A program made the position numbers and the translations under genes. The notes under the pieces are model-generated. The model did no database searches and was not told the origin of the DNA. It worked only from the letters and a program-made list of their open reading frames with translations. A stretch of 64,000 nt of DNA, taken from contig NC_043002.1 in assembly GCF_006345805.1 (NCBI RefSeq), positions 43,090,001-43,154,000 on the forward strand, in the 5' to 3' direction. Shown here one piece after another: positions 2,520-64,000 of this stretch. This DNA comes from Octopus sinensis. Lineage: Eukaryota. How positions within the stretch are numbered: position 1 is the first letter of the stretch; the number at the start of each line of letters is the position of its first letter.

Positions 2520-3582
2520 ATGGCCCTCTTAGACATGCCCTCAGCCACGCAGAGAGCCACGATCACAAGTTATGCAGATGATACAAAAGTTTCACAGGCA
2601 ATACAGAACCCTGAAGACACTATGCACCTGCAATGTGAGCTGGACAAAATATACAAGTGGACTAAAAAGTATAGCATGCTGTTCAATGCTGAAAAGTTTC
2701 AAGCTTTATGCTATCAGCATGCAAAACTAAATGTAATACTCAATAAATACACTAGACCTGGAGGGATTGCAATCCCAGAGGCGCAATCAGTGCGAGACCT
2801 GGTATTTACATGAGTGATGATGCAACCTTTCATGTGCGTGTTGCTAAATTGGCAATGAAATGTAGGCGGCTGACCGGATGGATTCTTAGAACCTTTAGAA
2901 CAAGAGACCAGGAAACCATGATGGTCCTCTGGAGGACACTTGTCCTAAGCCACTTTAACTATTGCTCTCAGCTATGGTCACCATCCAGTGTCAAATTAAT
3001 CACGGAACTTGAGACGATCCAACGAAGCTACACGAAGATAACCTCTGTGCAGCATATAAGCTACTGGGAAAGACTCAAGAGATTAAGACTCTATTCCTTA
3101 GAGCGTAGGCGAGAAAGATATGTTATAATATACATCTGGAAGATCCTAGAAGGACTTGTCCCAAACTTTGGCATCGAGAGTTACACAAATACTAGAACAG
3201 GGCGCCACTGCATAGTGCCAAGGACTCCAAATTTGCCATCAAGATGTAGGACAAGATACTGTGATAGCCTGGGCTTCAGAGACTCACAGCTCTTCAATAT
3301 CCTCCCGAAGAACCTGAGAGACCTGCATGGGGTGGATGCAGATGTCTTTAAAATAAAACTGGATCTTTTCCTGTCAGGTATCCTAGATGAACCAACTTCA
3401 CGGCATGAGGTGCAGATGAGGGCAGCTGCATCGAACTCTCTCATGCACCAAATGGCAATTGCTAAAAAGCAATCGTGAAGTAAAATCATGTAGCAACACC
3501 AAATGGCGGTACCCCAGCATGGCCACAGCTCGTGAGCTGAAACTAGATAAAATAAAATAAAAAATAAATAAAAATAAAAAAT
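2519..3582 (+). mobile_element. 5'-truncated CR1-group (CR1/L2-like) LINE: RT C-terminal part, 3' UTR and (AAAAT)n tail
   Basis: SYADDTK catalytic motif (ORF 2520-2813), then LVLSHFNYCSQLWSP..LETIQRSYTK..LRLYSLERRRER (ORF 2810-3478), typical of the CR1/L2 RT thumb; one frameshift; 5' end abuts (TA)n. Confidence 0.9.

Positions 3583-10209: not shown

Positions 10210-10277
<68 letters not shown>
9041..10277. repeat. Tandem duplication of a ~560-bp element plus (TAA)n tail (period 612 bp); probably a retroposon 3' end
   Basis: AATGCCCCGATGCAGTACC at 9041 and 9653; copies almost identical and each ends in (TAA)n. Confidence 0.9.
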
Positions 10278-10279
<2 letters not shown>

Positions 10280-10520: not shown

Positions 10521-10567
<47 letters not shown>

Positions 10568-11369
10568 TAATAATAATAATAGAAGAAACAAAGAAAGAAC
10601 GAAAGAAAAAAGAAAAGACGAAAGAAAAAAGAAAAGACGAAAGAAAAAATGGAGAAAGAAAGAACGAAAGAAAAAAGAAAGATAGAAAATAGAAAGAAAG
10701 GACGAAAGAAAACGAAAAAGAGAAAGAAAGAACGAAAGAAAACAGAAGGAAAGAAAGAAAGAAAAAAAGAAAGTCAGCATCAGGAGAAAGTTTTTTCAAA
10801 CTTTATTGTTGAAACATATGTACTCAGCTACTTGTATTCATACATTATGCGCACATTTGGGTATGTGCGTGTGTGTGTGTCTGTGTGTAGATATGTGCAT
10901 TCATTAGATTTCATTGAATTAGTAATTATAGTAAATAAAGAGAACAGTGTTTTAAATTTGCAATAGGATCACAGTTAACAACCATGCCAGTTACCCCCCA
11001 AAAGAGCGCTAAATAACCGTAGAAAGAACAGATCGTCACACAAAATACCTTGTCATAATCTTTCTACGGCTGATAGAAGGTATACCAGTAAGGTACTAGA
11101 GCCCATGAAATCGACGACATCTCTTTCTACAAAGTGTTAGAAATTCGGTGAAATTAATTAGAGCAATAAGTTTGTACAATTTTATTTTCTCTCTTTTACA
11201 TTCTGAGTTCAAAATCTATAGAGGATGACTTTATATTTTTTCTTGTGGGTTCAGTGAAATAAAGTGCCAGTAAAGAAAAAAAAAAAAAACGAAAAGAAAA
11301 AAGAAAGAAAGAAAGAAAGAAAGAATGATTGGGCTTGTCCCTATGTAAGAAATCCTTATATTAAACTAT

Positions 11370-11390
11370 TTTCTCCTTTTTGTTTTTCAG
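11370..11390 (+). promoter_or_regulatory. Splice acceptor of the neuropeptide coding exon
   Basis: TTTCTCCTTTTTGTTTTTCAG|GTTTG: strong polypyrimidine tract plus CAG, 70 nt before the ATG; implies an upstream noncoding exon (not located). Confidence 0.75.
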
Positions 11391-11460
11391 GTTTGTCTCG
11401 TTTCGAACGCTCTCGCTCTCTCTTTTGACTGTGCTGAAGATTCACCAATCCTGCCAAGCA

Positions 11461-12123
11461 ATGGTGGGACATAAGAATTACAGTTCCTTGTTATTTGCTT
11501 TGTTTCTTACTCTCTCCATCCAAATTTGCCGCAGCTATAATAGCGGAAATTACAACAGCAGGCAGCTTCTATCATTGCACAATCATGAAGAAGCTAAAGA
11601 ACTCAACAAAGACAGACTACTTACCATGGAAAAAGCGCTCAAGTCTGGCATCATTGGAAGGAGTCTAACTACCAAACGCGGTTTCGGAGATAAACGAGAT
11701 GGGAATATTCGACCCATTTTATTAGAAACTAGAGGATTCGGTGACAAACGTTTAGCTGAAATAAGCTACGAGAGAGAAGGATCACCTGAAATACAAGGAA
11801 TTGAACTCTTCGCTCGCGGATTTGGAGATAAAAGAGGGCTTGATGATAATCAATTACTGGAAAAATCAATTTTTTCTAACCCTGACTACCTTGAACTTTT
11901 AGACAGAAGTATCGATGACAAAAGGGGATTTGGTGATAAAAGGGGATTTGGCGATAAAAGAGGATTTGGTGACAAACGATTCATGGTTGTTGGGAGAGGT
12001 TTTGGTGATAAACGTGGATTTGGAGATAAACGTGGATTTGGTGACAAGAGAGGCTTTGGTGATAAACGTGGCTTTGGTGATAAACGGGGTTTTGGAGACA
12101 AGCGTGGATTTGGTGACAAATAA
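11461..12123 (+). CDS. Achatin-family neuropeptide precursor (220 aa) with 13 GFGD copies; precursor of octopus cardioactive peptide Ocp-1/Ocp-2 (Gly-D/L-Phe-Gly-Asp)
   Basis: Hydrophobic signal peptide MVGHKNYSSLLFALFLTLSIQICRS, then 13 GFGD units flanked by KR or R on the left and KR (last: K-stop) on the right; repeats vary at synonymous codon positions. The in-frame start at 11380 in the ORF track lies in the intron. Confidence 0.92.
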   Translation: MVGHKNYSSLLFALFLTLSIQICRSYNSGNYNSRQLLSLHNHEEAKELNKDRLLTMEKALKSGIIGRSLTTKRGFGDKRDGNIRPILLETRGFGDKRLAEISYEREGSPEIQGIELFARGFGDKRGLDDNQLLEKSIFSNPDYLELLDRSIDDKRGFGDKRGFGDKRGFGDKRFMVVGRGFGDKRGFGDKRGFGDKRGFGDKRGFGDKRGFGDKRGFGDK

Positions 12124-12266
12124 ATTAGATTGCTTTTCTGGACAGACATTAAAATTTTAACTTTTAGATGTTTACTTTGAGGCATAAATGTATGACTATA
12201 TATAATTATGTTTCTTACGAAAAAACTAAAACTAAAAATATATGTCCATGAAAATATAAACTGAAC

Positions 12267-12288
12267 AATAAAACAAAAGAAAAATAAA
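12267..12288 (+). terminator. Candidate polyadenylation signals of the neuropeptide gene
   Basis: Two AATAAA hexamers about 145-165 nt after the stop; AT-rich context makes chance matches possible. Confidence 0.4.
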
Positions 12289-17849: not shown

Positions 17850-20250
17850 GGGGAGACCGGGGTTAGTTGACTATATTTTTCACATTTTCACAGACAGTAA
17901 TACTATTTAAGACCACTATAATGGGGTATGTTGACACATGAATGCATTTTCTTGGAACATACATGTTAGTGGACAGAAACACATGATATAAGCTTGTTGG
18001 TTTGCTGAAGGGCTTTTATTACGGTTTCATTACATATCATCATCTGAGTCACAATATGGGCATGTGAATATTGTCAGATTTGGAGTGCATGCCTCGTGAA
18101 CCCAACCTTTGCAATCAGAGCATTGAAGCCACACTTCCCTTCCTTTGCTGTTGAAAAAAGGCTCGCAGCACACTAAGCAATAGCACTCTTCCTCATCAGA
18201 GGTATCACTTTCTTGAATTTGAACTTTTTTCTTAACAGTTGGACCTTTTCCCTTCGTTGACCTGCCCTTACTGAGTTCCTTTCCTATCGTTCCTTTATCA
18301 ATGTTTGTCTTCTTTTTACTTTTACTTTTTGTCTTTTCTTCTATGATTGCTCTTTTAACCGGCGAGTCAGTGACGGTTTCAGAACAACGTTTCTTTCTTC
18401 TTCTGGTTGATTCTTTCCTAGGCCTGCTTTGGGTAGTGGACGGGTTTGAAATGGTAAAAGAAAAAACCTGGCAACTATGTTGCTTGAAGGCCCATGTGTT
18501 GCAGGTGCTGAAGGCCTAGGTGCTGAAAGTGCAGGATCAGGTCGGTCAGTGACATGGCTTGGTGCAAAGTCGCTGTCTGTAGAAATGTTGCGATCAAAAG
18601 GGCATATTCCTGTAGTTGGCCATGCAGTTTTGACAATATACGGAATGTCATAAATGGTCATGGTCTGGCCAGGATGGTTGATATGCCAGTCATCAATGGC
18701 AGTGTTTTTGTATTCTTCAGTGGTCCATTGACCGCTTTGTCCAACGGTTGTAACCTGTGTGTGCAGTGAGGTGGGAAAGAAAGCATGGTGATGCCATTGT
18801 CTGATGCATAAGTCAGCCCCTCGATACTAAGGTGGGAATCGCAATTGTCCAACAAGAGAAGGCACGGTGACTTCTTTGAACATTTCACATTCCTCATAAA
18901 GTGTTGAAGGAATTTCACAAACTGCTCCTCACACATCCAACCAGATGGATTAGTACCTCCATCGCTGCCTGATGGTCCATTGTTCAGGAAATGTGACCTA
19001 AGGTTCTTCCGGGGAAAAACAAAAAAACGATGGTATGCTGTTTCCAGCGGCATTTACACAGCATGCCAATGTGACCAAAGTTCCCCTCTCCGAACATGTC
19101 CTTTTTCCCACTTGCTTTTTCTGGCAATAATTCTGTCGGGGCGGGTTGTTACACCAGTTTCATCCATGTCATAAATGGTCATGGTCTGGCCAGGATGGTT
19201 GATATGCCAGTCATCAATGGCAGTGTTTTTGTATTCTTCAGTGGTTCATTGACCGCTTTGTCCAACGGCTGTAACCTGTGTGTGCAGTGAGGTGGGAAAG
19301 AAAGCACGGTGATGCCATTGTCTGATGCATAAGTCAGCCCCTCGATACTAAGGTGGGAATCGCAATTGTCCAACAAGAGAAGGCACGGTGACTTCTTTGA
19401 ACATTTCACATTCCTCATAAAGTGTTGAAGGAATTTCACAAACTGCTCCTCACACATCCAACCAGATGGATTAGTACCTCCATCGCTGCCTGATGGTCCA
19501 TTGTTCAGGAAATGTGACCTAAGGTTCTTCCGGGGAAAGACAAAAAACTATGGTATGCTGTTTCCAGCGGCATTTACACAGCATGCCAATGTGACCAGAG
19601 TTCCCCTCTCCGCACATGTCATTTTTACCACTTGCTTTTTCTGGCAATAATTCTATCGGGGCGGGTTGTTACGCCAGTTTCATCCATGTTGTAGATATTG
19701 AATGGATCAAATTTATACCGAAGCATCACCTCAGCAAGTTGGTTGAAAAACAGCAACATTTGTCTTGCTGAAACTTGTTGCTCGTGCCAAGCTTGTTGCC
19801 TGTGGACTTATGGATAAATTCTTGTGTCATTGAAGATATCCAGAGAACCAGTCTTCACCTGCCATTTCTGGCTCCTGTCAGGCTGGAGGGATATTACATC
19901 CATGTGCCTTTGCCATCTGAAAAGCCAATTTCCGCACATCCTTTGGAGCAAGCCCATAGTAAATTTCTGCGGCAGCCAAAACATAAGCCTCTAACTGATT
20001 CTCGAACTCGTCGGTGAGAACTTGCCGTGGCTTTTTGTATTCATTAAGACTGTGATCGTTGTTGTTTGCTTCGGAAGCCTTGGAGCAGTAGCGAGACAGA
20101 AATGCCAAATGTCCTCGAAGCTTCCCGCAAGGAGCTGACACGAGCTCGGACCTGTTGAATAGCCTGTTGGATTACATCCTGTGGAAGGGTTGCCCTCTCG
20201 CTTTTGCGTTTGTAGTGTCGCACCATGACAATTGCAGATTTAGGTCTGTA
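17850..20250 (-). mobile_element. pogo-like DNA transposon (psq-HTH, CENP-B HTH, DDE_1, C-terminal PHD-like Cys/His motif), inactivated
   Basis: TA followed by TIR-like GGGGAGACCGGGGTTAGTTG at 17850; MVRHYKRKS..SLREASRTFGI; LLLLDNCDSHL..SFPPHCTHRLQPLDK; C-terminal HEACT..FTCPYCDSDDDM-stop (18030); stops and frameshifts; second TIR not found. Confidence 0.85.
18645..19689. repeat. 521-bp tandem duplication inside the pogo DDE region
   Basis: ATGTCATAAATGGTCATGGTCTGG at 18645 and 19166; ATGT microhomology at the boundaries; few substitutions. Confidence 0.92.
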
Positions 20251-46782: not shown

Positions 46783-48287
46783 ACGGGAAGCTTTATGAAA
46801 ATAAACAAAAGACGAAGGCAGGTGGAAAACAAACGAACAATTGTATTAGTATGGCGCTCAGGAAATATAAATAAAACAAGTCTTTAACGTTTCGAGCCTA
46901 CGCTCTTCAACAGAAAGATACACAGAGAGAGAAAAACACAGAAAGAAGGAGAGAAAAAAAATGCGTGCAGTAGCTAACGAATCAACATGGCGATCTGATT
47001 TCGGCCAGAGGTCAAAGATCAAACATGAGACGCGAGAGCGAAATAAGGGGAGATAATAAGGTTGATAAATGGGTTGAGGGACCAGCTAATAGTGCGTGGG
47101 AGGGGTCTGGATGTGTGTATGTATAGGGTTGGTGTATGTATTAGTATGTATAAGGGTGTGTGTGTGTGTGTGTGTATGAGAGAGTATTAGTGCGTAGGAT
47201 TGGTCTGGACGTGCGTATGTATTAATTCCTGTTCACGGCGCAAACGGGAATCCGGATGGCCTCTGTGTAAGGACAAACCGAACACAGATAGGTGTTGCAA
47301 GGAGTGACTGGTGGAGCGGAAATGGCGTGAGACCGGTGTGTCGTTCGCAAGGTGGATGTCACGAAGGTGTTCCGCGAACCGGTCAGCCAAGCGGCGTCCC
47401 GTTTGTCCGATGTACAAGGAATTGCAGAGAGAGCAAGAGATGCAATAGATAATATTGCTGGAGGTGCAGGTGAAGGAGTGGATGATGGGATAGGGTCGAT
47501 GGTGGGTGCTAGTGAAGCGGGTGGTGTTGGAGAGGTAAGGGCAAGTGCGGCAACGTGGGCGGGAGCAGGGGAACGAGCCGGGTTGGGAGGTAGGGTCAGG
47601 GAAGGAGCTATGGACCAAAGGTCTCGAAGGTTGTGGGCTCGTTTGAAAGAGGGGAGGGGTCGGTTAGGGAAGAGGTGTGAAGTGGACGGGTCGGACTGGA
47701 GATGACGGAAAGCTCGAAGAATGGTGCGTTGGAGACGTAGGGTCGTGGGGTGGTAAGTGAGGGGAAAAGGGAGGCGGGAGACTACAGGGCGGGTTCGGGG
47801 AGAGAGAGCAGATACACGGTCCACGGACCGTGCTCTGGCAAGGGCGGTGTGGATAGTGGTGAGGGGGTATCCACGTAGGGTGAAGTGGTGAGCCATACGT
47901 TGAGACTGAGTCTCAAAGTCATGGTCGTCACTACAGAGCCTACGTAGACGGAGGAATTGGGAATAGGGGATGGAAAGCTTGGTGTGTTCTGGGTGGGAGG
48001 AAGAGAAGTTGAGGTATGAGTGTGAGTCTGTGTGTTTGTAGTGAATGGAGGTGGTAAGAGTGAAGTGAAGAATGCTAACCGAAATGTCGAGGAAGGAGAC
48101 AGAGGTGTTGGAGATAGTGGAAGTGAAGTGGAGGGCTGGATGGAAAGATTGGACGAAAGAGAGGAAGGAATCTAGATGTTCGCGGGAGAGTGAGGTGGCA
48201 CCGATAATGTCGTCAATATAACGACCATATAGTTCAGGAGTGGGACCAGTGAAATTAGAGAATATTTGGGCCTCAACATAGCCAACG

Positions 48288-48290
<3 letters not shown>
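46783..48290 (-). mobile_element. 5'-truncated Penelope-like element (RT C-terminus, Cys motif, GIY-YIG, pLTR), Neptune-like
   Basis: YGRYIDDII, SFLDI, YKHTDSHSYL..SSHP, CSRPRCRTCP, IIYCISC..LYIGQT; frameshift at about 47620; both ends abut (TA)n tracts. Confidence 0.9.
46882..46917 (-). ncRNA. Minimal hammerhead motif in the pLTR, core mutated (A6 to U)
   Basis: CUUU-CUGUUGA-A-GAGC(GUAG)GCUC-GAAA-CG-U-U-AAAG; helices intact, palindromic ACGU helix III. Confidence 0.55.
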
Positions 48291-48326
<36 letters not shown>

Positions 48327-48354
48327 TATATATATATATATATATATAATATAT

Positions 48355-48417
<63 letters not shown>

Positions 48418-48594
48418 ATATATATATAATATATATATTATATAATATATATATATATATATATACATACATATATATATCAGCCACAGCAGGAAATGTA
48501 TCAGGACATGAAATATAAAAGCCGGACTAGACTACTTTATGCGCAACACCATTGTCTCCCGAGACAGAAAGGATGCCAACAACCAATATATATA

Positions 48595-52427: not shown

Positions 52428-52508
<81 letters not shown>

Positions 52509-52557
52509 AAACAAGTAAAAAATAGAAAATGCTAAAATAATTTTATAGTGAACATTT

Positions 52558-52595
52558 CAGTACCGGTTTCGGTCATTTTGAGACCTTTTCAACTG
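52558..52595 (-). ncRNA. Minimal type I hammerhead ribozyme, U3-A8 variant (pLTR copy 1)
   Basis: CAG-UUGAAAA-GGUC(UCAAAAU)GACC-GAAA-CCGG-U-A-CUG. Confidence 0.75.
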
Positions 52596-52944
52596 TAACG
52601 ATTAAATAATTAAATTTAGAAAAATTAGAAGAAAAGTTTTTTTAAAAAAAAATTTTTTATAGTAGTGTTCAGATTTAAGTGGCATTCTGCCTTTCTCTGA
52701 CTCCCTTGTTTGCACTTGTGTGTTCGAGGTAGTTGTGAGCTCTTGGTAGGGTAGTAGAGAGAAGGCTGGTGAGGAAAGGGGGGTGGGAGAATCTGGGAGT
52801 GCCCTGATGGTCGTATTTTGAATGGTCAGTGGCGGCTGGCAGTCTCAGTTCAATTCAGGAGAATATTTATATTGACAGGCTTCTTTATAGAATTAGCGTA
52901 GGTGTTATACTAAAAAACATTAGTGACAACTTAAGGGGTAGGGG

Positions 52945-53215
52945 GTGGAGAAGAAGAAAAAGAAGAAGAAGAAGAAGAAGAAGGAGAAGGAGAAGGAGAA
53001 GATGACGATGATGGTGATGGTGGTGATGATTATGACGACGATGATGATGATAACGATGATGATGAAGAAGAAGAAGAAGAAGAAGGAGGAGAGGGAGAAG
53101 ATGGTGTGTGATGATGGTGGCGATGATGATGATGCCGATGATGATGATAACGATGATGATGAAGAAGAAGAGGAAGAAGAAGAAGAAGAAAAAACAGAGA
53201 AGGGAGAATATGAAT
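52945..53215. repeat. Compound (GAA)n/(GGA)n/(GAT)n tract inside the PLE 3' region, present in all three units (also 57350-57600, 61765-62005)
   Basis: The same internal layout is copied in each unit. Confidence 0.9.
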
Positions 53216-53321
53216 GAATGGGTAAATATAGCTATGAAGGGCTGATAGTAATGGATTCTATGGAGTGTAGTATTTGTGTGTGTATATATATTTTTTTCTT
53301 TTATTCTAAAGTTGAGGTATA

Positions 53322-55633
53322 TTAATTATTTGTCGTAGACCCGTTAAGAAGTGGCTTGTATTTTGTAATAAAGAGATTTTCTTTACTTATTCGTTGTCTC
53401 CAGGTTGTATCGTCCCTAAATTGGTAGAGGGGGAAAATTCTGAAGTTTGGTGTTTTTTGTTGGCGCAAGTATCTATGTGTTGGCTAAAAGCTATTTTTCT
53501 GTTTTGGGGAATTTTTATCTGGGATCTGTGCAGGGCCATTCGTTTACGCAAACCATTTTTTGTTTGGCCTATGTACTGCTCTTGACACCCGAGCAGGTTA
53601 GTGAGTATATTAGGTTCTCCGAAGCACATGTGAAGTTGCTTTTCACTGTAAAACGTTGTCCCTGTTTGAAGGAGAACTCAGAACCCTCGATTAGATAGTC
53701 GCATATCCCGCAATTGGGTCTTCCACATTTTTTTACTGTCGGCTTCTGTGCTGAAGAGTGAATTCGGGCTTGTGTAAGGAGACTTTTCATGGATCTAGGC
53801 TGTCTTTTGCTTTTTATGATCGTGTGTGTTTGGAGGATTGTGTTCATTCTGTGGTCTTTTTTTAGGAGGGGTATGTTGTGGAGGATGGTGTCGAAGGCTT
53901 CGTTATTGAGAGGGTGTGTGTGGAGATGTATGGTAAGGCTTTTGGTTGTAAGTTTTTCTTTGATTTGGGATGTCTCAGTTCCTTGATGTTAAGTTGAAGG
54001 GCACGTTGAATGCATTTGTCAATAAGTGAAGGTGGATAGTTCCTGGTGATTAGGGTATCTTTTAGTTCTTGTAGTCGTGTGTCTCTGGTGTTTGCGTTAG
54101 AGACTATAGTGCATATCCTTTTTGCTAGATTGAAGGGGATATTCATCCTGGTGTGTCTGGGGTGGCATGAATTGAATGGAAGATATTGCTTGGAGTCTGT
54201 AGGCTTATAGTATATGTCTGTTTCTATTATATTATTAGCTTTCTTAATGAGGATATCGAGGAAGGGGAGTTGTTGTTGGCTATATTCCATCGTGAATTGG
54301 ATGTTTACGTCCAGTCCGTTTAAAATTTTCTGGAATTCTATGAGTTTTTCTATATTTTTATGCCAAAGGATGAAACAGTCATCTAGATATCTCTTCCAGT
54401 TGTTTTCTATGTAGATGGAGAAAGGGCTGCCATATCTTTCTAGAACCTTACGATACAGACTGATCTCTAGGTATCCTATGACTAGGTTGGCAAAGGAGGG
54501 GGCCATTCGTGTACCCATCGCAGTCCCCGATTTTTTTCGGTAGAAGTTGTCATTGAAGGCGAAGAAGTTATTTTCCAGGATGAATTTAACCCCTTCTATC
54601 ACAAATTCTTTTTTGATGCGGTGTGGTAGTTCGTTGGCGTGATTCTCTAGCCAGAATTGGATTGCCTCTAGTCCTAGGTTGTGGGGGATATTGGAGTAGA
54701 GGTTGACTACATCGAAGGATACCAGTATGGTGTTTTTGTTTATAGTATTCGGTAGGTGATTGAGCATATCTAAGTCGTCCCTTATATAGCTTTTGACATG
54801 TTTGAGGAGTGGTTTTAACAGGGTGTCTAAAGTTACTGAGGCGGTGGGTTTCGCATGCGGGACCTGCTATTATGGGTCTCAATTTGAGGTCATTAGGATT
54901 AGGGACTTTAATTATTTTGTCTGTAGCCTTGCATGCGTTGCTTATTTTTTCACTTTTGTGGATCTTAGGTATACCGTAGAATTGGCTAGTTTTACTTGTG
55001 AAATTGGTCATATAATCATATTCTTTGTCGGTTAGCCCTGCTTTGTATGGGTTTAATATGGATTTTAGTTCCCTCATTATTTTTTGTTGACTGTAGTTTT
55101 GTGCCTTTTCATAGTATGTTGTGTCTTCCAGCATAGAAAGTACCAAAGTTATGTAAAATGTCGTATCCATTAAGACAACAGCACTCCCTTTATCGGCCTC
55201 TTTGATTGTTATTGTTTTATCTAGTTTTAATTTGTTCAACTCAGCCCATTCTTTTTTGCTGAAGTTTGGTTTGTGTTTTGTTGTGTGCATATGTTGATAT
55301 GGGTAATTTGATATGTGGTCACAGAAATCATCAAGTGTTTTATTCTTACCTTTCGAGGGGGTGTAGTTACTCCTATTTCTGGCTAACGATTCGTCCTCGT
55401 TGTATTTATCGTATAGCTTCTCAGTAAGTCTTAATTTTCTGCAGAATTCTGCGATGTCTTCTTCATTTCATTGTAGTTGGGGTGTTGTGGGGTGGGTGTA
55501 AACTTGAGTCCTTTGGAAAGTATGTTTATTTGGTTGCTGTTAGTTCCTTGTGAGTTAGATTAATAATTTTTATTACTTTTGGTTCCTCCTGCTTGTTTGG
55601 TGCTATCTTGGTCTCTGTGTTTGCGTATTGGGT
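53322..55633 (-). CDS. PLE pol, unit A (about 770 aa; RT, Cys motif, GIY-YIG), broken by 1-nt indels
   Basis: INL..LSKGLKFTPTP, IKEADKGSAVV, FYGIPKIHK, LRPII, SFDVVNLYSNIP, GTAMG..MAP, RYLDD, PFLD, CGRPNCGIC, LIY..C..C..QYIGQT. Confidence 0.88.
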
Positions 55634-56843
55634 CTAAAAAATGAATGCGGTGGTTGGGACGGTAGCTAGTATATAGTTGTTCTTTGTTGATTAGGGGTCT
55701 CCTGTTGTGATTTATGGTGTGTGTTCTTGGAGCAGTATTGAGGAGAGCATCCCGATATCCCATATTCGGGTGTGGTGTTCTAGGAGGCCTTCGTTGGTAA
55801 TCATTGCAAGTGGTGTGGGTTTGTTGTGCATGGTTGTTTAACCGGTTAATGGGACGAAGATTTCGTTGGTAACTCCTTTGGGTGGGGATGAGGTTGCAGT
55901 GTCTATGCTGTGGGTGTTGATTTATCCTTTCTCTGCTTGAAGTGGGGGTATTCCTGATATTGTATCGCTGGCTGCTTACAGAGTTAGGGTTAGGTCCTGT
56001 ATTCTTTTTTTGATAGTAGTGAAGGTTCCGATTTTTAGAGAGGTGTGTATCGGTGTTTGGGTGTTGTTTTGGTTTTCTTATTTTCTGGAAAGGGTTGTTG
56101 GAGGCGTGCTCTGTTTGAAAGACGGCTTCATAGTCTGAGAACCAGTGGCGCTTTTCTCCCAGCGTTGGAGAGATTTTAGTTCTTCTTTTTCACAGTCCTC
56201 TTTCCATAGTTTGGAGAACTTCTCTTGATCTGGGCCTTGGGTCATTTTGCGAATTTCTTCGTTGATATCTTCATCGGTGGATTTTATTTTATCCTCATTC
56301 GTTTGGGGGCTCTCAATTTCAGAAGTTCTATTTCCATTTTCATTTTTTCCAGTGCCATTCTCTCCCTGAGGTGTCTTTGTGTTTCAGGTTCTTCTGTAAT
56401 AGCTTTGAACTGGAATTTACGTGGGAGGATTAACGGGGTCCGGTTGAGCCATTTTTTCGTATATATCCGCTTTGTTGTTGTTTTGGATCATCTTCCAAAA
56501 GGCGAACTTTCTATCTCTGAGTGATTTGTTCCATTGTGGTATTATGTGGTGTTTCATTTGGTATGTTGTTAGAGTATATTGATCCCATATATTGACTCGT
56601 TTGGAGGTCCTTGGTTAGCGTTGTTAGAGAAAAATGTTCTAATTGTTTCGCATAAGTTTCCAAGGTTTTCGATAATTTCGGAGGTTGTATTTTTCGTATC
56701 TGTTTCTTCATTGTTCTCTCTCGATTGGGTTGAAGTGTCGAGTCGAATTTGTTCAAAAAAGTTGACAAATTTGTGTTGATTTTCTTGAGTTCTTTCAGTA
56801 TTTCTTCGTTTATGGAGGTGATTGTGTCTGTTTTTGTCGGCAT
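55560..56843 (-). CDS. PLE ORF1, unit A (about 430 aa; helical/coiled-coil N-half, basic low-complexity tail), broken by indels
   Basis: Reconstructed from both units; ends KSNKNY-stop and overlaps the pol frame by about 75 nt. Confidence 0.65.
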
Positions 56844-56963
56844 TTTCTGTATCTCGTGTGGGTTAATGATATGTATAAGGGTGAAAAGGAACACACGAGT
56901 TGATATATATGAAAAAACAAGTAAAAAATAGAAAATGCTAAAATAATTTTATAGTGAACATTT

Positions 56964-57001
56964 CAGTACCGGTTTCGGTCATTTTGAGACCTTTTCAACT
57001 G
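56964..57001 (-). ncRNA. Minimal type I hammerhead ribozyme, U3-A8 variant (pLTR copy 2)
   Basis: Identical to 52558-52595. Confidence 0.75.
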
Positions 57002-57730
57002 TAACGATTAAATAATTAAATTTAGAAAAATTAGAAGAAAAGTTTTTTTAAAAGAAAATTTTTATAGTAGTGTTCAGATTTAAGTGGCATTCTGCCTTTC
57101 TCTGACTCCCTTGTTTGCACTTGTGTGTTCGAGGTAGTTGTGAGCTCTTGGTAGGGTAGTAGAGAGAAGGCTGGTGAGGAAAGGGGGGTGAGAGAATCTG
57201 GGAGTGCCCTGATGGTCGTATTTTGAATGGTCAGTGGCGGCTGGCAGTCTCAGTTCAATTCAGGAGAATATTTATATTGACAGGCTTCTTTATAGAATTA
57301 GCGTAGGTGTTATACTAAAAAACATTAGTGACAACTTAAGGGGTAGGGGTGGAGAAAAAAGAAGAAGAAGAAGAAGAAGAAGAAGGAGAAGGAGAAGGAG
57401 AAGATGACGATGATGGTGATGGTGGTGATGATTATGACGACGATGATGATGATAACGATGATGATGAAGAAAAGAAGAAGAAGAAGAAGGAAGAAGGAGG
57501 AGAAGGAGAAGATGGTGGTGATGATGGTGGCGATGATGATGATGCCGATGATGATGATAACGATGATGATGAAGAAGAAGAGGAAGAAGAAGAAGAAGAA
57601 AAACAGAGAAGGGAGAATATGAATGGGTGTAAATATAGCTATGAAGGGGCTGATTAGTAATGGATTCTATGGAGTGTAGTATTTGTGTGTGTATATATAT
57701 TTTTTTCTTTTATTCTAAAGTTGAGGTATA

Positions 57731-60053
57731 TTAATTGTTTGTCGTAGACCCGTTAAGAAGTGGCTTGTATTTTGTAATAAAGAGATTTTCTTTACTTATT
57801 CGTTGTCTCGAGGTTGTATCGTCCCTAAATTGGTAGAGGGGGGAAAATTCTGAAGTTTGGGTGTTTTTTTGTTGGCGCAAGTATCTATGTGTTGGCTAAA
57901 AGCTATTTTTCTGTTTTGGGGAATTTTTATCTGGGATCTGTGCAGGGCCATTCGTTTACGCAAACCATTTTTTGTTTGGCCTATGTACTGCTCTTGACAC
58001 CCGGAGCAGGTTAGTGAGTATATTAGGTTCTCCGAAGCACATGTGAAGTTGCTTTTCACTGTAAAACGTTGTCCCTGTTGAAGGAGAACTCAGAACCCTC
58101 GATTAGATAGTCGCATATCCCGCAATTGGGTCTTCCACATTTTTTTACTGTCGGCTTCTGTGTTGAAGAGTGAATTCGGGCTTGTGTAAGGAGACTTTTC
58201 ATGGATCTAGGCTGTCTTTTGCTTTTTATGATCGTGTGTGTTTGGAGGATTGTGTTCATTCTGTGGTCTTTTTTAGGAGGGGTATGTTGTGGAGGATGGT
58301 GTCGAAGGCTTCGTTATTGAGAGGGTTGTGTGTGGAGATGTATGGTAAGGCTTTTGGTTGTAAGTTTTTCTTTGATTTGGGATGTCTCAGTTCCTTGATG
58401 TTAAGTTGAAGGGCACGTTGAATGCATTTGTCAATAAGTGAAGGTGGATAGTTCCTGGTGATTAGGGTATCTTTTAGTTCTTGTAGTCGTGTGTCTCTCT
58501 GTGTTTGCGTTAGAGACTATAGTGCATATCCTTTTTGCTAGATTGAAGGGGATATTCATCCTGGTGTGTCTGGGGTGGCATGAATTGAATGGAAGATATT
58601 GCTTAGAGTCTGTAGGCTATAGTATATGTCTGTTTCTATTATATTATTAGCTTTCTTAATGAGGATATCGAGGAAGGGGAGTTGTTGTTGGCTATATTCC
58701 ATCGTGAATTGGATGTTTACGTCCAGTCCGTTTAAAATTTTCTGGAATTCTATGAGTTTTTCTATATTTTTATGCCAAAGGATGAAACAGTCATCTAGAT
58801 ATCTCTTCCAGTTGTTTTCTATGTAGATGGAGAAAGGGCTGCCATATCTTTCTAGAACCTTACGATACAGACTGATCTCTAGGTATCCTATGACTAGGTT
58901 GGCAAAGGAGGGGCCATTCGTGTACCCATCGCAGTCCCCGATTTTTGTCGGTAGAAGTTGTCATTGAAGGCGAAGAAGTTATTTTCCAGGATGAATTTAA
59001 CCCCTTCTATCACAAATTCTTTTTTGATGCGGTGTGGTAGTTCGTTGGCGTGATTCTCTAGCCAGAATTGGATTGCCTCTAGTCCTAGGTTGTGGGGGAT
59101 ATTGGAGTAGAGGTTGACTACATCGAAGGATACCAGTATGGTGTTTTTGTTTATAGTATTCGGTAGGTGATTGAGCATATCTAAGTCGTCCCTTATATAG
59201 CTTTTGACATGTTTGAGGAGTGGTTTTAACAGGGTGTCTAAAAAGTTACTGAGGCGGCGGTGGGTTTCGCATGCGGGACCTGCTATTATGGGTCTCAATT
59301 TGAGGTCATTAGGATTAGGGACTTTAATTATTTTGTCTGTAGCTATCTTGCATGCGTTGCTTATTTTTTCACTTTTGTGGATCTTAGGTATACCGTAGAA
59401 TTGGCTAGTTTTACTTGTGAAATTGGTCATATAATCATATTCTTTGTCGGTTAGCCCTGCTTTGTATGGGTTTAATATGGATTTTAGTTCCCTCATTATT
59501 TTTTTGTTGACTGTAGTTTTGTGCCTTTTCATAGTATGTTGTGTCTTCCAGCATAGAAAGTACCAAAGTTATGTAAAATGTCGTATCCATTAAGACAACA
59601 GCACTCCCTTTATCGGCCTCTTTGATTGTTATTGTTTTATCTAGTTTTAATTTGTTCAACTCAGCCCATTCTTTTTTGCTGAAGTTTGGTTTGTGTTTTT
59701 GTTTGTGCATATGTTGATATGGTAATTTGATATGTGGTCACAGAAATCATCAAGTGTTTTATTCTTACCTTTCGAGGGGTGTAGTTACTCCTATTTCTGG
59801 CTAACGATTCGTCCTCGTTGTATTTATCGTATAGCTTCTCAGTAAGTCTTAATTTTCTGCAGAATTCTGCGATGTCTTCTTCATTTCATTGTAGTTGGGG
59901 TGTGTGTGGGTGGGTGTAAACTTGAGTCCTTTGGAAAGTATGTTTATTTGGTTTGCTGTTAGTTCCTTGTGAGTTAGATTAATAATTTTTATTACTTTTG
60001 GTTCCTCCTGCTTGTTTGGTGCTATCTTGTGTCTCTGTGTTTGCGTATTGGGT
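57731..60053 (-). CDS. PLE pol, unit B, broken by indels different from unit A
   Basis: Same motifs as unit A (ORF pieces 59435-59710, 58894-59532, 57796-58059). Confidence 0.85.
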
Positions 60054-61258
60054 CTAAAAAATGAATGCGGTGGTTGGGACGGTAGCTAGTATATAGTTGT
60101 CTTTGTTGATTAGGGGTCTCCTGTTGTGATTTATGGTGTGTGTTCTTGGAGCAGTATTGAGGAGAGCATCCCGATATCCCATATTCGGGTGTGGTGTTCT
60201 AGGAGGCCTTCGTTGGTAATCATTGCAAGTGGTGTGGGTTTGTTGTGCATGGTTGTTTAACCGGTTAATGGGACGAAGATTTCGTTGGTAACTCCTTTGG
60301 GTGGGATGAGGTTGCAGTGTCTATGCTGTGGGTGTTGATTTATCCTTTCTCTGCTTGAAGTGGGGGTATTCCTGATATTGTATCGCTGGCTGCTTACAGA
60401 GTTAGGGTTAGGTCCTGTATTCTTTTTTTGATAGTAGTGAAGGTTCCGATTTTTAGAGAGGTGTGTATCGGTGTTTGGGTGTTGTTTTGGTTTTCTTATT
60501 TTCTGGAAAGGGTTGTTGGAGGCGTGCTCTGTTTGAAAGACGGCTTCATAGTCTGAGAACCAAGTGTGCTTTCTTTCTCCCCAGCGTTGGAGAGATTTTA
60601 GTTCTTCTTTTTCACAGTCCTCTTTCCATAGTTTGGAGAACTTCTCTTGATCTGGGCCTTGGGTCATTTTGCGAATTTCTTCGTTGATATCTTCATCGGT
60701 GGATTTTATTTTATCCTCATTCGTTTGGGCTCTCAATTTCAGAAGTTCTATTTCCATTTTCATTTTTTCCAGTGCCATTCTCTCCCTGAGGTGTCTTTGT
60801 GTTTCAGGTTCTTCTGTAATAGCTTTGAACTGGAATTTACGTGGGAGGATTAACGGGGTCCGGTTGAGCCATTTTTCGTATATATCCGCTTTGTTGTTGT
60901 TTTGGATCATCTTCCAAAAGGCGAACTTTCTATCTCTGAGTGATTTGTTCCATTGTGGTATTATGTGGTGTTTCATTTGGTATGTTGTTAGAGTATTGAT
61001 CCCATATATTGACTCGTTTGGAGGTCCTTGGTTAGCGTTGTTAGAGAAAAATGTTCTAATTGTTTCGCATAAGTTTCCAAGGTTTTCGATAATTTCGGAG
61101 GTTGTATTTTTCGTATCTGTTTCTTCATTGTTCTCTCGATTGGGTTGAAGTGTCGAGTCGAATTTGTTCAAAAAAGTTGACAAATTTGTGTTGATTTTCT
61201 TGAGTTCTTTCAGTATTTCTTCGTTTATGGAGGTGATTGTGTCTGTTTTTGTCGGCAT
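59979..61258 (-). CDS. PLE ORF1, unit B (open for over 330 codons from MPTKTD)
   Basis: ORF 60257-61309 in the track; QWNKSLRDRKFAFW..ALEKMKMEIELLKLRA..LWKEDCEKEE. Confidence 0.7.
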
Positions 61259-61377
61259 TTTCTGTATCTCGTGTGGGTTAATGATATGTATAAGGGTGAA
61301 AAGGAACACACGAGTTGATATATATGAAAAACAAGTAAAAAATAGAAAATGCTAAAATAATTTTATAGTGAACATTT

Positions 61378-61415
61378 CAGTACCGGTTTCGGTCATTTTG
61401 AGACCTTTTCAACTG
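61378..61415 (-). ncRNA. Minimal type I hammerhead ribozyme, U3-A8 variant (pLTR copy 3)
   Basis: Identical to 52558-52595. Confidence 0.75.
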
Positions 61416-62136
61416 TAACGATTAAATAATTAAATTTAGAAAAATTAGAAGAAAAGTTTTTTTAAAAGAAAATTTTTATAGTAGTGTTCAGATTTAAGTG
61501 GCATTCTGCCTTTCTCTGACTCCCTTGTTTGCACTTGTGTGTTCGAGTAGTTGTGAGCTCTTGGTAGGGTAGTAAGAGAAGGCTGGTGAGGAAAGGGGGG
61601 TGGGAGAATCTGGGAGTGCCCTGATGGTCGTATTTTGAATGGTCAGTGGCGGCTGGCAGTCTCAGTTCAATTCAGGAGAATATTTATATTGACAGGCTTC
61701 TTTATAGAATTAGCGTAGGTGTTATACTAAAAAACATTAGTGACAAACTTAAGGGGTAGGGGGTGAAGAAGAAGAAGAAGAAGAAGAAGAAGAAGAAGGA
61801 GAAGGAGAAGGAGAAGATGACGATGATGGTGATGGTGGTGATGATTATGACGACGATGATGATGATAACGATGATGATGAAGAAGAAGAAGAAGAAGAAG
61901 AAGGAGGAGAAGGAGAAGATGGTGTGATGATGTGTGCGATGATGATGATGCCGATGATGATGATAACGATGATGATGAAGAAAAGAGGAAGAAGAAGAAG
62001 AAGAAAAAACAGAGAAGGGAGAATATGAATGGGTGTAAATATAGCTATGAAGGGGCTGATTAGTAATGGATTCTATGGAGTGTAGTATTTGTGTGTGTAT
62101 ATATATTTTTTTCTTTTATTCTAAAGTTGAGGTATA

Positions 62137-63020
62137 TTAATTGTTTGTCGTAGACCCGTTAAGAAGTGGCTTGTATTTTGTAATAAAGAGATTTTCTTTA
62201 CTTATTCGTTGTCTCCAGGTTGTATCGTCCCTAAATTGGTAGAGGGGGAAAATTCTGAAGTTTGGTGTTTTTTTGTTGGCGCAAGTATCTATGTGTTGGC
62301 TAAAAGCTATTTTTCTGTTTTGGGGAATTTTTATCTGGGATCTGTGCAGGGCCATTCGTTTACGCAAACCATTTTTTGTTTGGCCTATGTACTGCTCTTG
62401 ACACCCGGAGCAGGTTAGTGAGTATATTAGGTTCTCCGAAGCACATGTGAAGTTGCTTTTCACTGTAAAACGTTGTCCCTGTTTGAAGGAGAACTCAGAA
62501 CCCTCGATTAGATAGTCGCATATCCCGCAATTGGGTCTTCCACATTTTTTACTGTCGGCTTCTGTGCTGAAGAGTGAATTCGGGCTTGTGTAAGGAGACT
62601 TTTCATGGATCTAGGCTGTCTTTTGCTTTTTATGATCGTGTGTGTTTGGAGGATTGTGTTCATTCTGTGGTCTTTTTTTAGGAGGGGTATGTTGTGGAGG
62701 ATGGTGTCGAAGGCTTCGTTATTGAGAGGGTTGTGTGTGGAGATGTATGGTAAGGCTTTTGGTTGTAAGTTTTTCTTTGATTTGGGATGTCTCAGTTCCT
62801 TGATGTTAAGTTGAAGGGCACGTTGAATGCATTTGTCAATAAGTGAAGGTGGATAGTTCCTGGTGATTAGGGTATCTTTTAGTTCTTGTAGTCGTGTGTC
62901 TCTGGTGTTTGCGTTAGAGACTATAGTGCATATCCTTTTTGCTAGATTGAAGGGGATATTCATCCTGGTGTGTCTGGGGTGGCATGAATTGAATGGAAGA
63001 TATTGCTTAGAGTCTGTAGG

Positions 63021-63026
<6 letters not shown>
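62137..63026 (-). CDS. PLE pol C-terminal part, truncated unit C
   Basis: YKPTDSKQYLPFNSCHP through GIY-YIG to YKPLLNGSTTNN-stop. Confidence 0.85.
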
Positions 63027-63059
<33 letters not shown>

Positions 63060-63061
<2 letters not shown>

Positions 63062-63460
63062 ATTTAATAAATAAAACATATGCATACATACATATATGTA
63101 CATACCTACATCTATATGTATATTTACATGCATATGTGAGTACAGGACACCACAAATAAACGTAGAACACAACGAGAAACGAAAACATAAAATCAAACAA
63201 GGAAACAGACTTTTTTTAACAACGAAAAAACAGAGTACAAGACAAACAATACAAGGAAAATTCCCCTTCATCAGCTGCCCCTGTTTCGACCCAATGCATG
63301 TTTGTAAATTTAGGGTGAATACTTGATAGGTGTAAGCACCTGTATATGCCAGATAGTGGCAGAGGTGAGAGGGAAAATATCAAATAAAATCAAAAACAGA
63401 ACACAAAGGATATCGCGGTACACGTGTTTCAAGCTTTTTACATCAGTGTATAATTGATAT
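63060..63460 (-). mobile_element. PLE terminal-repeat remnant related to the piece in the 1-kb repeats
   Basis: 63340-63415 is the diverged reverse complement of 34533-34620. Confidence 0.55.
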
Positions 63461-64000
63461 AAAAGATAGTTTAAAGCTCTCTACAGCCACAAACATTGTT
63501 ATTCCAAAGAGTTACATCACACTATAAAAAATATGAAAGATACATGTAGTATTACCCATTATAATAGATATATCATATCTCCTTGAGAAAGTGCATTTGT
63601 AAAATTTCGTAACTGTATAACTGTATAAAGATTCATTGGATTTTGAAAATCTGCCCATACTGTATCACCAGACAACATAGAGGGAATGTTAAATAGATTG
63701 GAATGTGTTTATATTCACTTCCCTTGTAAAGATAGGAAGGAAAGAAATAGAAAGAAAAAAGATAGAAAGAAAGAAAAAAGAAATAAAGGAAAAGGAAAGA
63801 AAAGAAAAGAGAATACAGAGGAAAAGAGAGAAAAATAGAGAGAACAAAAAGAGAGTAAAAATAGAGAGAAAGAAATAAACGTTAAAAAATAACGTTAAAA
63901 TAAGGAATAAGGGGCAGGGTCACTTGATGTAAAAGACAATGGAAGCAAAAGACAAGGGTAATAGAATAAAAAAAACGCAATAAAAGTAAAAATAAGGATA

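What the first reader, a model, noticed from the sequence alone, without database searches (positions are those of the whole stretch)
11461..12123. Precursor of a D-amino-acid neuropeptide: 13 GFGD copies
Seen: signal peptide plus 13 GFGD units between basic sites. Established: Gly-D-Phe-Gly-Asp (Ocp-1) and its L-form (Ocp-2) were isolated from octopus brain as cardioactive peptides, related to achatin-I (GdFAD) and Aplysia GdFFD. Position-2 Phe is isomerised post-translationally by an enzyme that, to my knowledge, has not been identified in molluscs. A single-sequence, high-copy precursor is an ideal marker for cells expressing that isomerase. Unlike mixed achatin precursors, it encodes no GSWD (Ocp-3/4), so those need another gene.
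Basis: partly seen in the sequence, partly recalled or inferred. Interest (0 to 1): 0.72.

Follow-up and report, generated by a model that had tools for sequence, protein, structure and literature searches.

The report
Octopus achatin (GFGD) neuropeptide precursor gene
This is a real, intact octopus gene whose product would be cut into up to 13 identical copies of the tetrapeptide GFGD, but it is an ordinary member of the well-known achatin neuropeptide family.

Summary
Window 11461-12123 (+) is an ATG-to-TAA reading frame of 220 codons. It has a signal-peptide-like N-terminus and exactly 13 GFGD units. Ten units follow Lys-Arg and three follow a single Arg; twelve are followed by Lys-Arg and the last by Lys-stop.

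The 12 complete GFGDKR units all differ in DNA, yet every difference is synonymous (P about 6e-7). Selection therefore keeps the peptide and its cleavage sites.

The window is identical to an Octopus chromosome assembly (GCA_006345805.1). A second assembly (GCA_951406725.2) carries the same coding sequence.

GFGD is the standard achatin peptide: it is the Platynereis peptide, whose receptor responds only to G-D-Phe-G-D, and it is predicted in oyster and abalone precursors. Similar precursors turned up here from Capitella, a chiton and a mantis shrimp.

This includes the point that the mollusc isomerase is still known only as an enzyme activity, and the point that GSWD-type peptides come from a separate gene, as reported in squid.

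What differs from the six relatives compared is degree: more copies, and no variant units. D-Phe content, transcription and expressing cells cannot be tested with these tools. Interest is modest.

The parts
11357..11390 (+). Upstream boundary of the exon. It holds a TATA-like TATATTAAA (11357-11365) and a pyrimidine tract ending in AG (11389-11390). Either a splice acceptor for a 5'UTR intron or a promoter placing the start near 11390.
   Evidence: Read from the sequence. An in-frame TAA at 11362-11364 closes the frame upstream. Which reading is right cannot be decided without transcripts; this is inference.
11391..11460 (+). Putative 5' untranslated part of the exon. The start codon context is G at -3 and G at +4.
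   Evidence: There are no differences between the two octopus assemblies over this stretch.
11461..12123 (+). Complete coding sequence of the precursor: 220 codons plus TAA.
   Evidence: The same protein is encoded in GCA_006345805.1 and GCA_951406725.2, with an identical CDS.
11461..11535 (+). Signal-peptide-like N-terminus (residues 1-25; cleavage after S25 or possibly S19).
   Evidence: Hydropathy and the -3/-1 rule. Heuristic only.
11536..11679 (+). N-terminal propeptide (residues 26-71) ending in the first Lys-Arg.
11680..11691 (+). GFGD unit 1 (Lys-Arg on both sides).
11734..11745 (+). GFGD unit 2. It is preceded by a single Arg, with an Arg at P8, and followed by Lys-Arg.
   Evidence: Monobasic cleavage is inferred, not shown.
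11818..11829 (+). GFGD unit 3. It is preceded by a single Arg with no basic residue at P4, P6 or P8, and followed by Lys-Arg.
   Evidence: Release of the free tetrapeptide is least certain for this unit.
11926..11979 (+). Tandem block of GFGD-Lys-Arg units 4-6.
   Evidence: 18-nt period.
11980..11997 (+). FMVVGR, an 18-nt interruption in register with the repeat. It is possibly a decayed unit, and it supplies the single Arg before unit 7 (Lys at P8).
   Evidence: The 72-nt period, 2.8 copies, aligns it with a GFGDKR unit. Inference.
11998..12120 (+). Tandem block of GFGD units 7-13. The last is followed by Lys and then the stop codon at 12121-12123.
12267..12288 (+). Two AATAAA polyadenylation-type hexamers (12267 and 12283), about 145-165 nt after the stop.
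   Evidence: There are no differences between the two assemblies from the stop to here.

Best explanation
This is the octopus achatin-type prepropeptide gene, which is the genomic source of the tetrapeptide GFGD.

Shown from the sequence:
- One exon carries the whole reading frame.
- The protein starts with a signal-peptide-like segment.
- It holds 13 identical GFGD units next to basic residues.
- Selection has kept GFGD-Lys-Arg unchanged while the DNA of the units drifted.

Inferred from how such precursors are known to be processed:
1. The protein enters the secretory pathway and the signal peptide is removed.
2. Prohormone convertases cut after Lys-Arg, and probably after the three single Arg residues.
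3. A carboxypeptidase trims the basic residues. This leaves 10 to 13 copies of free-acid GFGD per molecule, because no Gly precedes the cleavage sites and so nothing is amidated. A few acidic spacer peptides are also left.

Inferred from other species:
4. A secretory-pathway L-to-D peptide isomerase then converts Phe-2 in part of the pool, giving G-D-Phe-G-D. That is Ocp-1 of Octopus minor, and the unconverted peptide is Ocp-2.
5. The D form is the agonist of an achatin-type G-protein-coupled receptor.
For: Anatomy: complete ATG-TAA frame, 13 GFGD units and the listed basic flanks; signal-peptide-like N-terminus; start codon in a good context, and AATAAA about 150 nt after the stop.

Selection within the gene: the 12 complete 18-nt units are all different in DNA. 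Their 10 kinds of variant are all synonymous in this frame, whereas 24% of possible single changes would be (P about 6.5e-7). The other five frames are not conserved between units.

Selection between assemblies: the roughly 900-nt exon has no difference between the two octopus assemblies. The flanks show 0.48% mismatches and 0.18% indel openings, so P for no change in the CDS alone is about 0.012.

Relatives with the same architecture:
- Capitella teleta CAPTEDRAFT_204894, E = 9e-8.
- P0002, P0012 (Oratosquilla oratoria), P0034 and P0077.
- A chiton precursor with 6 GFGD units (supplement of PMC6425005).

Literature:
- Oyster and abalone achatin precursors yield GFGD.
- Platynereis achatin is GFGD and its receptor needs the D-Phe form.
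- Aplysia CNS extracts isomerise the free tetrapeptide GFFD and need an aromatic residue or Leu at position 2. The enzyme behaves like a secretory-pathway protein.
Against: - No transcript or peptide evidence could be obtained. The exact-protein look-up returned only the two genome assemblies and no transcriptome contig.
- No cephalopod orthologue is present in either protein library, so there is no comparison across cephalopods.
- Similarity to relatives is confined to the short repeats. Such glycine-rich repeats attract spurious matches: most of the 61 hits are bacterial KSFGDKP-type tails, and PMC8557429 reports a mis-assigned 'achatin' for the same reason.
- The two octopus assemblies are too close for a strong test.
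- D-Phe content cannot be read from DNA. The original Ocp paper was not available to me.
Confidence: 0.9

Rival explanations
1. The gene is a genuine GFGD precursor, but in this species the peptide stays all-L. Alternatively, the D form is a minor by-product and signalling is by L-GFGD or by the spacer peptides.
For: Nothing in the DNA specifies isomerisation. The spacers (for example the 28-residue GLDD...SIDD peptide) are also released by the same cleavages.
Against: In Platynereis the identical peptide activates its receptor only in the D form. In Aplysia the D form of the related GFFD is the bioactive one and CNS extracts carry out the conversion. Within the gene, conservation is demonstrated for the GFGDKR units; the spacers have no internal replicates to test.
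Confidence: 0.15
2. It is a chance or decaying open frame in a tandem repeat (a minisatellite), or a glycine-rich non-neuropeptide protein that only resembles achatin precursors.
For: The region is a tandem repeat at the DNA level with 18- and 72-nt periods. It lies in repeat-rich, transposon-rich DNA. Glycine-rich repeats are known to mimic achatin precursors in similarity searches. Pfam finds no family.
Against: All variation among units is synonymous in one frame only. Three further GFGD units lie outside the tandem block, each next to basic residues. The N-terminus resembles a signal peptide, the frame is complete, and polyadenylation-type hexamers follow it. The architecture matches precursors from annelid, chiton and crustacean.
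Confidence: 0.03
3. The coding strand is the minus strand: the 99-codon frame 11886..12185 (-), which encodes LSPNPR/LSPKPR repeats.
For: This frame is open and starts with ATG.
Against: Its repeat units change amino acids wherever the plus-strand units change silently. It has no signal peptide and covers only the tandem block. It is the expected mirror image of a repeat without stop codons.
Confidence: 0.01

Closest known systems
Platynereis dumerilii achatin and its receptor (Bauknecht and Jekely 2015, as described in PMC5747525)
   Same: The mature peptide is identical, GFGD. The D-Phe form G{dF}GD is the receptor agonist and the L form is inactive.
   Different: It is an annelid. I did not see the precursor sequence, so copy number could not be compared. 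No octopus receptor was examined.
Ocp-1 / Ocp-2 of Octopus minor (Iwakoshi, Hisada, Minakata 2000, Peptides 21:623)
   Same: The paper is cited among reports of D-amino-acid peptides in PMC11277431 and PMC4721866.
   Different: That work isolated peptides from a different octopus species. I could not read it, so I cannot say whether a precursor cDNA was reported there.
Capitella teleta CAPTEDRAFT_204894 and the Acanthochitona crinita precursor
   Same: Both have a signal peptide, dispersed and then tandem GFGD-Lys-Arg units, and a C-terminus ending in GFGDK in Capitella, exactly as here. E = 9e-8 to Capitella.
   Different: They carry 4 and 6 GFGD units mixed with variants (GLGD, FYGD, GFAD; DFGD, GFGN, GFGQ). 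The octopus has 13 of 13 identical units.
Achatin-I precursor of Achatina fulica and the achatin-like precursor (ALNP) of Aplysia californica
   Same: The same family and logic: G-aromatic-X-D tetrapeptides between dibasic sites, with position 2 isomerised after translation.
   Different: The third residue differs (GFAD; GFFD and GYFD). These precursors were not retrieved by the sequence searches here.
Squid (Todarodes pacificus) 'achatin-related' precursor
   Same: It is a cephalopod brain transcript encoding 4-6 acidic tetrapeptides between cleavage sites.
   Different: It encodes GSWN/GSWD, not GFGD, and is a separate gene. It is the likely counterpart of the source of Ocp-3/4. I did not find such a gene in the window or in the protein library.

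Membership tests
Achatin-type neuropeptide precursors | N-terminal signal peptide | tested here: met
   K5, a hydrophobic core at residues 9-20 (hydropathy 2.67) and small -3/-1 residues at S19 or S25. This is a heuristic, not a trained predictor.
Achatin-type neuropeptide precursors | Several copies of a tetrapeptide Gly-aromatic-X-Asp | tested here: met
   13 copies of GFGD; shuffles give at most 1.
Achatin-type neuropeptide precursors | Units flanked by dibasic processing sites, with no C-terminal Gly for amidation | tested here: met
   Lys-Arg follows 12 units and Lys-stop follows the last. Lys-Arg precedes 10 units and a single Arg precedes 3. Asp is the last residue of every unit.
Achatin-type neuropeptide precursors | Sequence similarity to accepted family members beyond chance | tested here: inconclusive
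   E = 9e-8 to the Capitella protein, and matches to four more proteins of the same build. All of them are labelled hypothetical or uncharacterised in the sources. Similarity is limited to the repeats, and most other hits are spurious low-complexity proteins. The family name rests on the literature.
Achatin-type neuropeptide precursors | Purifying selection on the peptide and its cleavage sites | tested here: met
   10 of 10 variant types among 12 units are synonymous, P about 6.5e-7. The CDS is identical in two assemblies.
Achatin-type neuropeptide precursors | Expression in neurons and detection of the mature peptide | not testable with these tools
   No transcript or peptide data were reachable. 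The exact-protein look-up returned genome assemblies only.
D-amino-acid-containing peptides (Ocp-1 type) | D-Phe at position 2 of the mature peptide | not testable with these tools
   Chirality is not encoded. Phe at position 2 fits the specificity of the Aplysia activity, which accepts Phe, Tyr, Trp and Leu.
D-amino-acid-containing peptides (Ocp-1 type) | A receptor selective for the D form | not tested
   No receptor gene lies in the window. Selectivity is known for Platynereis.

The most novel reading that the evidence does not exclude
The precursor yields a single substrate in up to 13 copies. The neurons that express it should therefore also hold the still-unidentified secretory-pathway L-to-D peptide isomerase. 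Adding this gene to the reference used for the existing octopus brain single-cell atlases, and ranking the co-expressed secreted proteins, could single out that enzyme. Candidates would be serine-protease-like or cysteine-dependent proteins, as the Aplysia inhibitor profile suggests.
Probability: 0.25. Interest if true: 0.75.

Novelty: new member of a known kind. Interest (0 to 1): 0.28.

Why it matters
The gene links a peptide long known from octopus brain to its locus. It shows that octopus has pushed the usual achatin design to a uniform, high-copy form: 13 of 13 identical units, against 0-6 GFGD units mixed with variant units in the six relatives seen here.

Its practical value is as a probe. 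The gene behind L-to-D peptide isomerisation in nervous tissue is still unknown (PMC11277431). Cells that express a precursor with a single substrate are a reasonable place to look for it.

That value is not unique to octopus. The Aplysia ALNP gene and the Platynereis achatin gene offer the same handle in better-developed systems.

The two octopus brain and visual-system atlases I checked do not mention achatin at all. The gene may therefore be missing from, or unnamed in, the annotations they used.

Tried and rejected
- Protein search of 5.8 billion sequences, full precursor: only 4 proteins at E <= 10, none named achatin and none from a cephalopod.
- Exhaustive HMMER search of 1.84 billion representatives: 61 hits. 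Nearly all are low-complexity repeats unrelated to neuropeptides, namely bacterial KSFGDKP-type tails and GDA[RQ]V[FY] repeats. Only P0001, P0002, P0012 and P0034 have precursor anatomy.
- Synthetic GSWD/GSWN repeat query, to find the presumed second octopus gene: nothing.
- Pfam: no family.
- Exact look-up for transcript contigs: only the two genome assemblies. This says nothing either way about expression.
- Cluster look-up: the protein is not in the protein collection.
- Iwakoshi et al. 2000 and Bai et al. 2013 are not held.
- Supplements of PMC6425005: they gave a chiton precursor, but the files are cut, so no octopus achatin entry could be seen.
- Minus-strand frame 11886-12185: considered and rejected.
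- Structure prediction and RNA-family searches were not run, because they do not bear on a repetitive secreted propeptide.

Full report
**1. The observation**

Window 11461-12123 on the plus strand runs from ATG to TAA, 663 nt and 220 codons.

The product contains GFGD 13 times. Three units are dispersed, at 11680, 11734 and 11818. Three are in tandem at 11926-11979. Then comes an 18-nt interruption encoding FMVVGR (11980-11997). Seven further units follow in tandem (11998-12117), ending GFGD-Lys-stop.

Ten units are preceded by Lys-Arg. Three are preceded by a single Arg (Thr-Arg, Ala-Arg, Gly-Arg). Twelve are followed by Lys-Arg. Shuffled versions of the CDS never gave more than one GFGD.

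The N-terminus, MVGHKNYSSLLFALFLTLSIQICRS, has a basic residue, a hydrophobic core and small residues at -3/-1.

**2. Is it a gene?**

The strongest evidence is internal. The 12 complete 18-nt GFGDKR units are all different at the DNA level. Relative to their consensus they carry 10 kinds of change, and all 10 are synonymous in this frame. Only 24% of possible single changes would be synonymous (P about 6.5e-7). Arg codons even switch between the CGN and AGR families. In the other five frames the units differ in amino acid sequence. This also disposes of the 99-codon minus-strand frame at 11886-12185.

Tandem Repeats Finder reports an 18-nt period and a better-scoring 72-nt period. I infer that the array grew by duplication of four-unit blocks and that FMVVGR is probably a decayed unit.

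Upstream, an in-frame TAA (11362-11364) closes the frame. A pyrimidine tract ends in AG at 11389-11390, and a TATATTAAA lies at 11357-11365. Either a 5'UTR intron ends here or transcription starts here. The CDS is the same in both cases.

The ATG has G at -3 and +4. AATAAA hexamers lie at 12267 and 12283.

**3. Where it comes from**

The exact protein is encoded on chromosome-scale records of two NCBI assemblies, GCA_006345805.1 (CM016864.1) and GCA_951406725.2 (OX597819.1). The window is base-for-base identical to the first. From my own knowledge these are Octopus sinensis and Octopus vulgaris; the tools did not name the organisms.

Between the two assemblies, the roughly 900-nt putative exon (5'UTR, CDS and 3'UTR to the polyadenylation hexamers) has no difference. 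The 9 kb of flanks have 0.48% mismatches and 0.18% indel openings. The probability of no change in the CDS alone is about 0.012. This is weak support for constraint, as expected for such close genomes.

**4. Relatives**

Two very large protein searches gave no cephalopod orthologue and no protein named achatin.

Most of the 61 hits of the exhaustive search are unrelated low-complexity proteins, such as bacterial helicase or methyltransferase tails made of KSFGDKP repeats. PMC8557429 describes the same artefact for a mis-assigned brachiopod 'achatin'.

Five hits do have the precursor build, meaning a signal peptide and G-aromatic-X-D units between Lys-Arg sites:
- Capitella teleta CAPTEDRAFT_204894 (E = 9e-8; it also ends in GFGDK).
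- P0002 and P0034, from environmental assemblies.
- P0077, from a sequencing-run assembly.
- XP_076053535.1 of the mantis shrimp Oratosquilla oratoria.

A chiton precursor printed in the supplement of PMC6425005 has six GFGD units.

In a unit census, the octopus protein is the only one of the seven proteins compared in which all units are identical, and it has about twice as many GFGD copies as the next.

**5. What the literature adds**

- Oyster achatin precursors are predicted to give GFWD and GFGD (PMC4200219).
- The abalone achatin precursor gave the peptide GFGDKRGFGD by mass spectrometry (PMC6523705).
- That paper also cites an achatin transcript in the cuttlefish Sepia officinalis, so the family is already recorded in cephalopods.
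- Platynereis achatin is GFGD. Its receptor is activated by G{dF}GD and not by the L form, and only the D form changes neuronal activity in larvae (PMC5747525).
- A squid brain transcript called 'achatin-related' encodes only GSWN/GSWD (PMC10172372).
- For the isomerase, PMC11277431 (2024) shows an activity in Aplysia CNS extracts that converts free GFFD, GYFD and NWFa. It accepts Phe, Tyr, Trp or Leu at position 2, but not Ala, Ser, Asp or Lys. It is independent of pyridoxal phosphate and sensitive to AEBSF, DEPC, cysteine alkylation and disulfide reduction. The authors name identification of the enzyme as future work.
- A search from 2024 onward found no paper that identifies the enzyme.
- The octopus brain and visual-system single-cell papers do not contain the word achatin.

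**6. Mechanism**

Shown: the precursor anatomy and the selection on GFGD-Lys-Arg.

Inferred from general prohormone processing:
1. The signal peptide is removed.
2. Convertases cleave after Lys-Arg.
3. A carboxypeptidase trims the basic residues, giving non-amidated GFGD.

The single-Arg sites before units 2 and 7 have a basic residue at P8, which favours monobasic cleavage. The site before unit 3 has no basic residue at P4, P6 or P8. The yield is therefore 10 to 13 copies, and N-terminally extended forms are possible.

Inferred from other species: part of the pool is isomerised at Phe-2 in the secretory pathway, and the D form acts on an achatin-type receptor.

**7. Comparison, novelty and verdict**

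The gene meets every structural criterion of the achatin family that can be tested on sequence. Expression, peptide detection and chirality could not be tested.

It works like, and most probably is, the octopus orthologue of the lophotrochozoan achatin gene. It differs in degree only, in copy number and uniformity.

I found no paper describing this octopus locus, so I file it as a new member of a known kind. It may nevertheless be present in genome annotations under an uninformative name.

A specialist would not be surprised by it. Its use for finding the isomerase is reasonable but shared with Aplysia and Platynereis. Interest is 0.28.

Noticed in passing
window 52500-64000: A tandem array, with a period of about 4.4 kb and nearly three copies at 96-100% identity over many segments. 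The repeated element has minus-strand frames, one of which matches reverse transcriptase (RVT_1, 53865-54767). Head-to-tail retroelement copies are unusual and may be a Penelope- or DIRS-like arrangement, or an assembly effect.
   Followed up: partly
window 18661-19053 (-): An open frame matching the DDE_1 transposase domain (E = 3e-12). It is a fragment of a DNA transposon.
   Followed up: partly
window 10212-10279, 10521-10580, 10580-10770 and 11272-11325: Long (AAT)n microsatellites and purine-rich (GAAA)n-type tracts lie within 1.3 kb upstream of the precursor gene. The last ends about 65 nt before the putative exon start. Whether they affect transcription is unknown.
   Followed up: no
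P0012 = XP_076053535.1, Oratosquilla oratoria (not in the window): A mantis-shrimp protein annotated as uncharacterised has a signal peptide, four KR-GFGD-KR units and one GFWD. It looks like an unannotated crustacean achatin-type precursor with a long, unrelated C-terminal extension.
   Followed up: partly
window 11886-12185 (-): A 99-codon ATG-initiated frame encoding LSPNPR/LSPKPR repeats lies antisense to the tandem block. It is the mirror image of a stop-free repeat and shows no conservation of its own.
   Followed up: yes
window 11916-12120: The repeat scores better with a 72-nt period (four units) than with the 18-nt period. This suggests the array expanded by duplication of four-unit blocks, with FMVVGR as a decayed unit.
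   Followed up: partly
window 47222-48487 (-) and 2810-3478 (+): Long open frames (421 and 222 codons) with no Pfam match at E <= 0.001. They lie in G+C-richer DNA and are probably remnants of further mobile elements.
   Followed up: partly
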